This document shows, piece after piece, positions 34,322 through 37,300 of a stretch of DNA of 64,000 nucleotides (positions are counted from its first letter, which is position 1; each line of letters opens with the position of its first letter). Both the position numbers and the translations under genes were made by a program. A model generated the notes under the pieces. That model saw only the letters and a program-made list of their open reading frames with translations. It was not told the DNA's origin and ran no database searches. This DNA is from Anolis carolinensis (taxonomy: Eukaryota): assembly GCF_035594765.1 (NCBI RefSeq), contig NC_085841.1, forward strand, positions 191,441,574 through 191,505,573, written 5' to 3'.

Positions 34322-37300
34322 TGGCTGGTTATCCTTAAACCAGCTGATTTCAGGAGAAGGATCTCCAGAGACTTCACAGGTAAGCAACACATCTTGTCCT
34401 TCATTTACATTTTGAGATTTAGGTTGTATGACGAAGACAGGAACATTTGAGGTATCTTTTGAAACACTCATTTCAAAGTGACATTTGACAATGCCCTGGT
34501 CAGTTTTTCCTTCACAGGTTAGCATTCCTTCATCTTTCTGGCTAGGTTTTTTGATGGTGAGAGTATGGTCACTTCCTGACACACCATATCTATAATCTTC
34601 AGAGTTACTTAGCTGTATTCCATTCAGAAACCATTTCACATCAGAAGCACCAGCAATACTGGCTTTAAGCATAGCTTTTTGGCCTTCAGACACAGACATC
34701 TTAGTGGTAGTAGATTTCACTTCTGCGACAGATGTTTTAACATCTTCAGACACCAGAGACTTCTTAACAAACTCTTCTTGGACCACTGCCTTTTCTTGGG
34801 AAGTTACTGTAGATGTCTTCTGGGTAGATACTTCAGCTGTTTCGCTTTTTTGAGCTTTGGCTAAGCTTGATATCTGAGAAAAAGCACTTTTAAACACCTG
34901 GCCTACAAATTGGAAGCTGGTTTTGGAGGTACCACCTTCTGCAATAATCTCACATGTATATTCTCCTTGGTCAGATTCTTTGAGGTTATGGATCTTAAGT
35001 TCATATGTTCCATCAGCTGCATAATGAAACTTGAAATGACCATCTTCTTTCAATTTCTTGCCATCTTTGTACCAGGCTACTTCTTGGACACTTAAAAGAC
35101 TGCTTTCAACTGAACAGAACAGTTTTACTTTATCAGCAGTAGATTCCAACTTTAGCTGCTGTTTTATCTTAGGAGGAGCTGAAACTGGCAAGTCTACTTT
35201 CTCTCCTTGTGGTGTTTTTCCTGTAGCAGTTGATTTGGCCTTGGAGGGGGCAGATGATGGCTCAGGGGACTTGACTCTCTTGGGAGATTTTACTTTGTCT
35301 GGAGACTTTACATGACGCTCAGGCGATTTAACCCTTGTAGGTGATGTAACTGCTTTTTCTGGACCTCTTTTCTTTTGTACAGTCAAAGTAAAGTGAGCTT
35401 CTTGCCTTCCTTCCGAATTTTCTACCAGAACAGTGTAGCTTCCTTCATCTGAGCTCTGGACCATTGAAATTTCAAAAGTAGATCTATATTGTGTACGTGT
35501 GACTTGGTAGCGCCCAGAAGAAATAATAGCTTGACCTGCACGTATCCACGTCACCGTTGGTGTTGGTTCACCATCGATGTCACAAGAAAACCTTGCAGTT
35601 TCTCCTTCAGAAACAGTGATTGACCTTGGTTTTGTTAATATTGTTGCAGGCAGAGTGGTTTTAAACTTTCGGTGCACGGCTCTTTCTTCTAGTGATTTTT
35701 CTGCGGAGGCGCTGACTTTAGTTTCAGCCGAAGCATGATGTTCATATGATGATAATGATGCTCTTGTTTCTGTCAGCTCTGACTTGACTTCTCTTACTGA
35801 AGAACTTGCTTCTGTCGCAGAAACTTTCTTAAATGAGGAAATCCCATATGCTTCAGTCCTTGTCAAATCAGGAATAACTGATCTCGGGACTTCATCATCC
35901 CAGCGGTGGGAAGTATAAGTAGTATAATCTCCTCCTGTAACATCTAATGTTGCATAGTCAGAACATTCCCCTTTATAGTTTGTGCACATAACACGATATG
36001 TACCACTGTCATCAATGTGGCAGTCAAGGATCTCCAAGGTTAACACTCCACTAGTATTAGTGAAATGTATTTTATGGCTTTCTTGGAGTTCAACCCCATT
36101 ATGATACCATTTAACTTCAGCAGTAGGTTTGGACTGCACATTCAAAATAAATCTGGTGTTGGTGCCACATGGTACACGGTGCGAGCGCATTCTCAAAGTG
36201 ATGCGTGGGGCATGGTCCAAAGTGAAAGGTTCTTGAGTCAGAACTTCATATTTCCTTTCCATTGTTTTTTGAGTTTTCAGAGCAGCTTTCATGGATTCAT
36301 ATCTGGAAAATATATCAAATCTTGCTGTTCTTTCAAACCGAGAGAGCGATCTGTCACTGGACACGGGACTTGGTGAGCGTGGACGAGTTCTCTCTGGAGT
36401 TGGAGATCTTCTCTCATGTTCTTCTACAGGGCGTGAACGGGGTTTAATTAATTCAGACACAGGGCGCATTAGCTCAATGTAAGTTGGAGAAAGAGAGCGT
36501 CTCCTTCCTAGTAACCTTGAGGGAGGTGAAAATTCCCTGTGAACATGTCTCACCATTTCTATTTCTTCCTCCTCTTCTTTTGAGGACACTTCAGTTATTT
36601 CGTGTTCCCTCCTTCTTCTCCTTCGGCTCTTTTCTTCTTGTGACATATACTCAAGCTCACTCTTGTACTCTGAGAGCCTCTGGCTTGTGGTAACTGGTCG
36701 TAGCAACTCTTCATCTTCTTTCTCTGACATTATTCTCAGTTTTTGTTTTGGTGGTCTATAAACTGCTCTGTCATGGCGTTGTCGGAGCTCTGCATAACTT
36801 GCACTAGTTTCTTCTTTAGATGGTATATGATAGGTTGCATATCTCAGATCTCTTCTTGTAGATTCTTCAGCAGCGACTTGTGCACCGGCTGCAGAGTAAT
36901 GGAGAGAAGATAATTCAAAGCGTGGAGGGCTTCTGCTTGGAGGTGAAGCTGAAAAGCCTAACTCTAGTTCTTCTTCAAGTTTCAATCTTTCTTCCTCAGT
37001 TCTTTTCATGGCTAAGTAATCATCAACAGGAAGAAGTAATTCTTCTTCTGACAGGTCACTAAGTGATCGCCTTCTTGGTCTATAATAAAACTCATAGTCA
37101 GGAGATGGTGTACGCCGGCGTGCTGGTCTCACTATCTCAAGATCATCTTGGGACAATTTAGGTATGCGCCATTTAGGTTTATATTGATCAGTAAAGCGTG
37201 GCAGCGGTGTCACATAAAATTGTTCCCATCTGGAAAGGCGAATGCGCTTCGGTCTCTTCTGGACAATTCTGTCAATTTTACCTGGCATTTCATACTGATC

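What the first reader, a model, noticed from the sequence alone, without database searches (positions are those of the whole stretch)
34322..35180. Titin lacks M-band Ig domain M7; Mex1, Mex2 and Mex3 are collapsed into one exon
Seen: after M6 (..GGTSKTSFQFVGQVFK) the ORF runs SAFSQISSLAKAQKSETAEVSTQKTS..KAVVQEE.. straight into M8 (MSVSEGQKAMLKASIAG). There is no intron and no Ig domain in between, and the junction is near 34840. Established (recalled human titin): M6 is followed by is4, then M7 (KPVIVTGLQDTTVSSDSVAKF..WTKDGK|AITQGGKYKL..CKLTIK) split across two introns, then ..AQKVSTQKTS. No M7-like sequence is visible in the neighbouring introns, and is5 also looks much shorter. Inference: an in-frame genomic deletion removed M7 and two introns, giving a naturally shortened M-band titin in this lineage.
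Basis: partly seen in the sequence, partly recalled or inferred. Interest (0 to 1): 0.8.

Follow-up and report, generated by a model that had tools for sequence, protein, structure and literature searches.

The report
Anole titin lacks domain M7
The green anole's titin gene really does lack the M-band domain M7 and its two introns, but turtles, snakes, geckos and birds carry the same old deletion and frogs and several fishes have similar ones, so it is not special to this lizard.

Summary
On the minus strand, one 5.9-kb titin exon (34322-40254) runs kinase, M1-M6, a 63-residue linker, M8 and half of M9. It holds no M7 and no intron. Genomic contigs from two studies and spliced RNA contigs from two further studies show the same structure.

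The direction of change is correct. M7 orthologs exist in hagfish, teleosts and mammals. The two introns that split M7 sit at the same places and phases in a teleost and a rodent. The fused, M7-less exon is therefore derived by an in-frame genomic deletion.

The deletion is not private to anoles or squamates. Geckos, a cobra, two turtles and at least 17 birds share the same breakpoints. This points to one event in the sauropsid stem. Three frog families and one unidentified vertebrate lack M7 with different breakpoints. Teleost titins show further independent losses of M7, M8 or M7-M9. The M7-M9 loss in zebrafish and salmon is published (PMC6922384).

This is a real, old feature that is already visible in public protein records. 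It is one more case of a known kind of change, M-band domain loss. Interest is modest.

The parts
34322..40254 (-). Single fused M-band exon of titin (equivalent to mammalian Mex1 plus the start of Mex3). It encodes A170 Ig, fn3, kinase, M1-M6, the linker, M8 and the N-terminal half of M9. Length 5,933 nt, entered in phase 1 and left in phase 0.
   Evidence: ORF. Pfam kinase, fn3 and 9 I-set stretches. Acceptor. Donor. The RNA contig joint at 34322.
34889..35179 (-). Ig domain M6 (APPKIKQQ.. to ..SFQFVGQVFK).
   Evidence: Coordinates. It is clearly orthologous to mammalian M6 in the Mex1 ORFs P0026-P0030.
34700..34888 (-). 63-residue linker: about 15 residues left from is5 (SAFSQISS..KS), joined to is6 (ETAEVSTQKTS..KAVVQEE..TTTK).
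   Evidence: Alignment of linkers against a rodent-like spliced protein and hagfish.
34841..34846 (-). Deletion junction (..QKS|ETAE..), the place where the rest of is5, M7, two introns and the first 4-5 residues of is6 are missing relative to mammals and teleosts.
   Evidence: The DNA and RNA contigs are unbroken here.
34457..34699 (-). Ig domain M8 (MSVSEGQK.. to ..HFEMSVSK).
   Evidence: Orthology to M8 of birds, frogs, mammals and hagfish.
34322..34444 (-). N-terminal half of Ig domain M9 (VPVFVIQ.. to ..WFKDNQP).
34235..34321 (-). 87-nt intron inside M9 (GT..AG), retained as in mammals (the Mex3/Mex4 intron).
   Evidence: Skipped by RNA contigs X18 and X20 and present in DNA contigs X1 and X12.
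34081..34234 (-). Exon for the C-terminal half of M9 (IVLSSNV.. to ..SLTVL), the Mex4 equivalent.
   Evidence: RNA contig pieces 34081-34234. Sequence. It matches UniProt H9GP59 (P0150).
32703..32984 (-). is7 exon (Mex5 equivalent). The boundaries are approximate.
   Evidence: ORF 32680-33018. Match to P0150.
32276..32568 (-). Last coding exon, Ig M10 plus the stop codon (Mex6 equivalent). The 5' boundary is approximate.
   Evidence: ORF 32276-32626 ending ..NINIRSI. Match to P0150.

Best explanation
The window holds the 3' end of the green anole titin gene. Its M-band segment has nine Ig domains (M1-M6, M8-M10) rather than the ten found in mammals.

The bony-vertebrate ancestor had M7 encoded as in mammals and teleosts. 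The first 39 codons lay at the end of the big kinase exon. A phase-0 intron followed, then a roughly 160-nt exon, then a phase-1 intron.

In the stem lineage of living reptiles and birds, one genomic deletion of roughly 1-1.5 kb by the rodent layout removed the distal part of linker is5, all of M7, both introns and the first few codons of is6. The deletion was in frame. It welded three exons into one and left M6 tied to M8 by a roughly 70-residue unstructured linker. The anole later lost four more codons there.

The shortened titin is the normal expressed protein. Shown: the structure, its expression, its sharing across sauropsids, and the ancestral state. Inferred: the M8-M10 end of titin lies an Ig length (about 4-5 nm) plus linker closer to M6, and M7 has no indispensable role, because frogs and several fish lineages lost it independently.
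For: Structure and expression in the anole.

Same fused, M7-less ORF or protein elsewhere:
- Two unnamed squamates, geckos, birds, frogs and one unknown taxon.
- Naja, Pelusios, Chrysemys and Leptobrachium.
- A tree places the unnamed ORFs P0001-P0003 and P0040 inside squamates, with birds as sister.

Identical breakpoints in all sauropsids (..KSVQKEA | E.L.VSTQKK..). Right-hand breakpoints differ in frogs and in P0008.

M7 is ancestral:
- Orthologs in hagfish, Electrophorus, Goodea, Mastacembelus and rodents.
- Goodea genomic DNA has ..AAG GAT GGA AAG|GTAACA (phase 0) and ..CAA G|GTAAGA (phase 1). The rodent has ..AAG GAT GGA AAG|GTAACC and ..AAA G|GTGCGT.

Skipping the rodent Mex2 (about 160 nt between a phase-0 and a phase-1 intron) would shift the frame. 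Splicing alone therefore cannot yield this product.

No M7-like relic exists anywhere in the 64-kb window.
Against: Crocodilians were not sampled. The tuatara record (P0148) starts inside the linker, so it is only compatible. Neither changes the bracketing by turtles, birds and squamates.

The size and mechanism of the deletion are inferred from living mammals and teleosts, not from an ancestral sequence. No deletion scar or flanking repeat could be shown.

No functional consequence was tested. The count of independent losses rests partly on an unidentified run (P0008, SRR089296) and on breakpoints in a fast-evolving, low-complexity linker, where later small indels could blur the original junctions.
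Confidence: 0.86

Rival explanations
1. One reading: a deletion private to the anole or to squamates gives a naturally shortened M-band titin in this lineage only.
For: The anole does lack M7. Its linker is 4 residues shorter than in other squamates.
Against: Turtles (Pelusios, Chrysemys), at least 17 birds, a cobra and geckos have the same linker with the same breakpoints.
Confidence: 0.02
2. M7 was never present in the tetrapod ancestor and is a mammalian gain. On this view the fused exon is the primitive state.
For: M7 is absent in frogs, sauropsids and the unidentified P0008, which by distance lies outside frogs plus amniotes. On a simple count, mammals are the odd group among the tetrapods sampled.
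Against: Mammalian M7 is 46-56% identical to hagfish and electric-eel M7. No Ig of the M7-less species reaches comparable bit scores (at most 63 bits against 90-100; best paralogue M3 at 40-44% identity to fish M7, 30-40% to rodent M7). Both introns sit at the same codon and phase in a teleost and a rodent. A de novo gain would not recreate this.
Confidence: 0.03
3. The fusion arose by recombination of the gene with a reverse-transcribed, aberrantly spliced titin mRNA (RT-mediated intron loss) rather than by a plain genomic deletion.
For: Two adjacent introns near the 3' end of a very highly expressed gene vanished together. RT-mediated intron loss is biased toward 3' ends (established knowledge).
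Against: Coding sequence was lost on both sides (distal is5 and the first residues of is6), not just the introns. The next intron downstream, only 87 nt long, is intact. Normal exon skipping would be out of frame. It would need a cryptic donor in is5 and a cryptic acceptor in is6.
Confidence: 0.07
4. Assembly collapse: M7 exists in the animal but was lost from the reference assembly.
For: None beyond the general possibility in repeat-rich linkers.
Against: DNA contigs from two studies and spliced RNA contigs from two other studies are colinear with the window across the junction. The UniProt anole model H9GP59 has the same linker. Many other species show the same structure.
Confidence: 0.005

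Closest known systems
Mammalian TTN M-band exons Mex1-Mex6 (exons 358-363; ten Ig domains M1-M10; PMC6922384)
   Same: Same gene, same order of kinase, M1-M6, KSP linker, M8, M9, is7 and M10. The intron inside M9 and the introns around is7 are the same.
   Different: M7 is absent, along with the distal part of is5 and the two introns that flank Mex2, so Mex1, Mex2 and Mex3 form one exon. The linker is about 63-70 residues. In the rodent-like record there are about 290 residues (is5 + M7 + is6) between M6 and M8.
Zebrafish and Atlantic salmon titin lacking M7, M8 and M9 (PMC6922384, Fig 1A legend)
   Same: Lineage-specific loss of M-band Ig domains downstream of M6 in an otherwise conserved titin C-terminus. 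The same layout appears here in a fish contig: M6, intron, is7, M10 (L005).
   Different: The sauropsid loss is limited to M7 and keeps M8 and M9. It is a different, independent event.
Bird and turtle titin C-terminal records (for example 'Titin, partial' of Cuculus, Corvus, Tyto and Aptenodytes; UniProt records of Pelusios and Chrysemys)
   Same: Same M6-linker-M8 arrangement with the same breakpoints, so the same evolutionary event.
   Different: Only residue-level divergence. The anole linker is four residues shorter.
Teleost titin paralog that keeps M7 but lacks M6 (Goodea, Mastacembelus, Electrophorus)
   Same: It keeps the ancestral split of M7 over two exons, which shows the state before the deletion.
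   Different: It has no M6. Within this paralog, other species show their own fused-exon deletions of M7 or of M7 plus M8 (P0102-P0115).

Membership tests
Titin (TTN), M-band segment | An Ig-fn3-kinase module followed by a series of I-set Ig domains separated by unique linkers | tested here: met
   Pfam finds Pkinase (2.3e-54), fn3 and 9 I-set stretches in the exon.
Titin (TTN), M-band segment | Orthology to titin of other vertebrates over the whole exon | tested here: met
   74-91% identity to gecko, bird, rodent and frog Mex1 ORFs over 1,139 ungapped columns. The tree follows the species tree. Named cluster members are annotated as titin.
Titin (TTN), M-band segment | KSP-repeat linker before M6, serine-rich is7, and C-terminal M10 ending ..IRSI | tested here: met
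   VKSPE.. repeats lie upstream of M6. The is7 and M10 ORFs lie at 32680-33018 and 32276-32626.
Titin (TTN), M-band segment | Expressed and spliced as predicted | tested here: met
   High-depth RNA contigs, one of 26.4 kb, are colinear with the exon and splice out 34235-34321.
Ten-domain (mammal-type) M-band layout M1-M10 | An M7 Ig between M6 and M8 | tested here: not met
   No M7 ortholog in the exon or anywhere in the window.
Ten-domain (mammal-type) M-band layout M1-M10 | Six M-band exons, with introns after ..WTKDGK and after the last residue of M7 | tested here: not met
   Both introns are absent. There is one exon from 40254 to 34322. Rodent and teleost loci keep both introns.
Sauropsid-type nine-domain M-band layout (this report) | M6 joined to M8 by a 66-71-residue linker with the junction ..KSVQKEA|E.L.VSTQKK.. 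| tested here: met
   The anole aligns to this junction with a 4-residue shortening. It is shared with 2 unnamed lizards or snakes, geckos, Naja, 2 turtles and birds.

The most novel reading that the evidence does not exclude
The stretch between M6 and M9 of titin is a hot spot of repeated, independent, in-frame domain loss across vertebrates. The count is one loss in the sauropsid stem, one in frogs, one in an unidentified basal lineage, and several in each teleost paralog. The likely driver is that the Ig domains there are flanked by low-complexity K/E/S/T-rich linkers prone to slippage or illegitimate recombination. On this reading mammals are the only tetrapods sampled here that keep M7, which would then mark either a mammal-specific function or partner, or simple dispensability. 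Birds, reptiles and frogs would serve as natural M7 knock-outs for testing whether M-band titin acts as a ruler.
Probability: 0.5. Interest if true: 0.45.

Novelty: new member of a known kind. Interest (0 to 1): 0.3.

Why it matters
Work on titin's M-band (structures, disease-variant mapping, ruler models) is based on the ten-domain mammalian layout and assumes it holds across higher vertebrates (PMC6922384). If every reptile, bird and frog sampled builds normal sarcomeres without M7, then M7 is not needed for M-band assembly. It also means chicken and frog muscle, the classical ultrastructure models, carry a titin whose M8-M10 end sits closer to M6.

This bears on two things. One is how human missense variants in exons 358-360 (M7) are read. 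The other is any model in which titin's M-band domains set the spacing of M-bridges. It does not reveal a new mechanism. Domain loss in this region is already documented for fish, and the sauropsid state can be seen in public protein records.

Tried and rejected
1. The exhaustive representative search with the titin-specific is2 linker returned only 19 proteins and no full-length titins. Clustering at 50% collapses most vertebrates. It yielded only the fish contig P0079/L005.

2. I looked for DNA direct repeats flanking M7 in the rodent locus that could explain recurrent deletion. Only the 39-nt tandem repeats inside is5 were found. At the settings used (8-nt seed, 14-nt minimum) no repeat shared with the start of Mex3 was reported; shorter matches such as a 9-nt 'GCACAGAAA', noticed by eye, were not systematically tested. 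At protein level the is5 unit (..AEAKKSAQKT..) resembles the start of is6 (..TEAQKVSTQKT..). This remains speculation and forms no part of the verdict.

3. I could not identify the taxon of P0008 (SRR089296). A paper search for the run number found nothing. By distance it lies outside frogs plus amniotes.

4. The Lemmus protein P0067 is not on record for contig retrieval. The contig of P0027 ends just after Mex1. The rodent host contig L003 from a JGI metagenome was used instead.

5. Paper searches for a report of M7 absence in birds, reptiles or amphibians found none. This library lacks most subscription journals, so it does not prove that nobody has noted it.

6. The careful tree did not finish in the time allowed, so the quick tree is cited.

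Every search used single-exon references or database proteins. Cluster P0113 (201 members, possibly human) was neither opened nor used, and no contig taken for human was fetched.

Full report
WHAT IS THERE. The minus strand of the window carries the 3' end of titin. One ORF (34061-40273) contains a single exon running from the acceptor ctgcag|TT at 40254 to the donor CCA|GTAAGT at 34322, 5,933 nt in all. Pfam finds a protein kinase domain, one fn3 and nine I-set stretches in it. Reading along the protein, the order is A170, fn3, kinase, M1-M5, the KSP linker and M6 (35179-34889). A 63-residue linker follows (34888-34700), then M8 (34699-34457) and the first half of M9 (34444-34322). Downstream lie an 87-nt intron, the second half of M9 (34234-34081), is7 (within 32680-33018) and M10 (32276-32568). 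Earlier notes of this scan name the genome as the green anole. The UniProt Anolis carolinensis record H9GP59 matches these exons (P0150). All searches used single-exon references or database proteins.

IS M7 REALLY ABSENT? Yes.
- tblastn with the complete hagfish M7 and with the N-terminal halves of four mammalian M7 domains hits only the known Ig exons of the window. The best hit is M3, at 44% identity. Nothing turns up in the introns or downstream of the gene.
- M7 orthologs score 90-100 bits and 46-60% identity among rodent, hagfish and electric eel. Against the anole, bird, turtle, cobra and frog sequences they reach at most 63 bits, and always on a paralogous domain.
- A PDB sequence search of the M6-M9 stretch returns only generic Ig matches among the 60 best shown and no orthologue-strength match to a solved titin M-band domain, although a solved M7 structure exists (PMC6922384).
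- Logan contigs of two DNA runs from different studies cover 34000-35700 without any indel.
- Contigs of two high-depth RNA runs are unbroken from 34322 to 35700 and splice out exactly 34235-34321.

Assembly collapse and a hidden M7 exon are therefore both excluded. One DNA run may be the assembly's own source.

WHAT IS THE ANCESTRAL STATE? I reconstructed the mammalian layout from a rodent host contig in a JGI metagenome (L003). Mex1 ends ..ACA AAG GAT GGA AAG|GTAACC, inside M7, in phase 0. Mex2 is about 160 nt and ends ..ATA AAA G|GTGCGT, right after M7, in phase 1. Mex3 starts with ..VKDTEAQKVSTQKTS.. and carries is6, M8 and half of M9.

A teleost genome gives the same picture (Goodea atripinnis, L007). 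The big exon ends ..TCA AAG GAT GGA AAG|GTAACA in phase 0, and the next small exon ends ..GTG CAA G|GTAAGA in phase 1. M7 is also present in the hagfish titin model (P0014), in Mastacembelus (P0019) and in Electrophorus (P0157). M7 and both introns therefore predate the split of ray-finned fishes and tetrapods, and the fused anole exon is derived. Because Mex2 lies between introns of different phase, skipping it would shift the frame. A genomic in-frame deletion is the simplest origin.

HOW WIDE IS THE LOSS? The word-based protein search with the anole M6-M9 stretch found eight further ORFs or proteins with M6, linker, M8 and half of M9 in one frame and no M7. Cluster names and a tree identify them:
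- Squamates: Sphaerodactylus townsendi, two more geckos and two other lizards or snakes.
- Birds: Cuculus, Merops, Corvus, Tyto, Aptenodytes and others.
- Frogs: Staurois parvus, and run SRR32377442, which is Litoria verreauxii alpina according to PMC12171712.

A second search in a shorter length class added Naja naja, the turtles Pelusios castaneus and Chrysemys picta, and the frog Leptobrachium leishanense, all with M6 directly linked to M8. It also added a tuatara record that starts inside the linker and is only compatible.

In an alignment of the linkers, every sauropsid has the same junction. About 20 residues of is5, ending ..KSVQKEA, join is6 at E.L.VSTQKK... Total length is 70-71 residues, or 66 in the anole, which lost four more codons. 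This points to one event before turtles, birds and squamates diverged.

The three frog families have 53-54 residues, with the right breakpoint 12-15 residues further into is6. The unidentified P0008 has a third junction. By distance it lies outside frogs plus amniotes: 74-75% identity to all tetrapods, against 78% between frogs and amniotes. Mammals sit between frogs and sauropsids on the tree and keep the ancestral M7 with its introns. The frog and sauropsid losses must therefore be independent.

A LABILE REGION.
- Teleost titins of the M7-bearing paralog show at least four further layouts in single genomic ORFs. In some, M7 is deleted with a few of its first residues left (P0102). In others M7 is gone entirely (P0103, P0104), or M7 plus most or all of M8 are gone (P0108, P0110, P0111, P0115).
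- The other paralog keeps M6. In one fish it goes straight to is7 and M10 (L005), the layout published for zebrafish and salmon (PMC6922384, Fig 1A legend). In Arapaima it keeps M8 and M9 but not M7.
- Hagfish and the M7-bearing teleost paralog lack M6.
- Relative to all the other groups, the rodent-like is6 in that alignment has about 52 extra residues, and the other mammalian records (Cavia, Lynx, wombat) also show a longer is6. Rodents also have 39-nt tandem repeats in is5.

MECHANISM AND CONSEQUENCE. Four things are shown: the structure, its transcription, its distribution, and the polarity of the change. The following are inferred.
- A single deletion of roughly 1-1.5 kb (rodent scale) occurred in the sauropsid stem.
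- The contour between M6 and M8 is shortened by one Ig (about 4-5 nm, a standard figure for I-set domains) plus the lost linker.
- M7 carries no indispensable function outside mammals. The M-band review sections I read list partners for M10, is7/M9-M10, the M3-M4 linker and the KSP linker, but none for M7.

I found no flanking DNA repeat that would explain the recurrence. An RT-mediated origin is possible but less economical, because coding sequence was lost on both sides and the next small intron is intact.

NOVELTY. I found no paper noting that birds, reptiles or frogs lack M7. The library is incomplete, and the state is plain in public protein records. The kind of change, loss of M-band Ig domains in a lineage, is published for fish. 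I rate this a new member of a known kind, with modest interest.

Cluster P0113 (201 members, possibly human) was neither opened nor used. No contig taken for human was fetched. No N runs occur in the window.

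Noticed in passing
window 34824 (minus-strand codon in the linker): G>A on the plus strand in one DNA run and both RNA runs changes VSTQKTS to VSIQKTS, the form seen in UniProt H9GP59. It is a Thr/Ile polymorphism or strain difference in the linker. Other differences lie at 34568, 34883, 35228 and 35353.
   Followed up: partly
window 34835-34850: The anole linker is four residues shorter than in every other sauropsid sampled (..QKS|ETAE.. against ..QKSVQKEAE.L..). This is a second small in-frame deletion at the old junction.
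   Followed up: partly
P0102, P0103, P0104, P0108, P0110, P0111, P0115 (teleost Logan ORFs): Single genomic ORFs of one teleost titin paralog show at least four different in-frame deletions of M7, or of M7 plus part or all of M8. This implies repeated independent losses. The species are unknown.
   Followed up: partly
L005:9900-10722 (fish contig, SRR32411273): After M6 the next exons are is7 and M10, so M7, M8 and M9 are all missing. This matches the published zebrafish and salmon layout. The KSP linker is greatly expanded in this protein (P0079) and in Salarias (P0084).
   Followed up: partly
P0014 (hagfish), L007 (Goodea), P0019 (Mastacembelus): Hagfish titin and the M7-bearing teleost paralog pass from the KSP linker straight into M7 with no M6. 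M6 and M7 are thus each missing in different lineages. The hagfish case rests on a gene model only.
   Followed up: partly
L003:15386-15598 (rodent titin is5): Four to six tandem 39-nt repeats (13-residue units ..QKTAESAEAKKSA..) expand is5 in rodents. Copy number differs among the rodent ORFs of cluster P0027.
   Followed up: partly
P0142 against all non-mammals, is6: The rodent-like is6 carries about 52 extra residues (..SEVKSHEK..EEVTKTSQASE..) that are absent from hagfish, Arapaima, frogs and sauropsids; other mammalian records (Cavia, Lynx, wombat) also show a longer is6. This looks like a mammal-lineage insertion or internal duplication.
   Followed up: no
P0150 (UniProt H9GP59, Anolis carolinensis), P0148 (tuatara), P0149, P0151: Automatic gene models of several reptiles place false introns inside the big exon. 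The anole model jumps from before M5 into the linker. Such records cannot be used alone to count domains.
   Followed up: partly
window 33440-33590: A long A/T-rich trinucleotide microsatellite, read as poly-Ile or poly-Leu ORFs on both strands, lies in the intron between the M9 C-half exon and the is7 exon. A similar run lies near 30450-31250.
   Followed up: no
This fits the conserved TTN-PLEKHA3 neighbourhood (the neighbourhood is from my own knowledge and was not checked).
   Followed up: no
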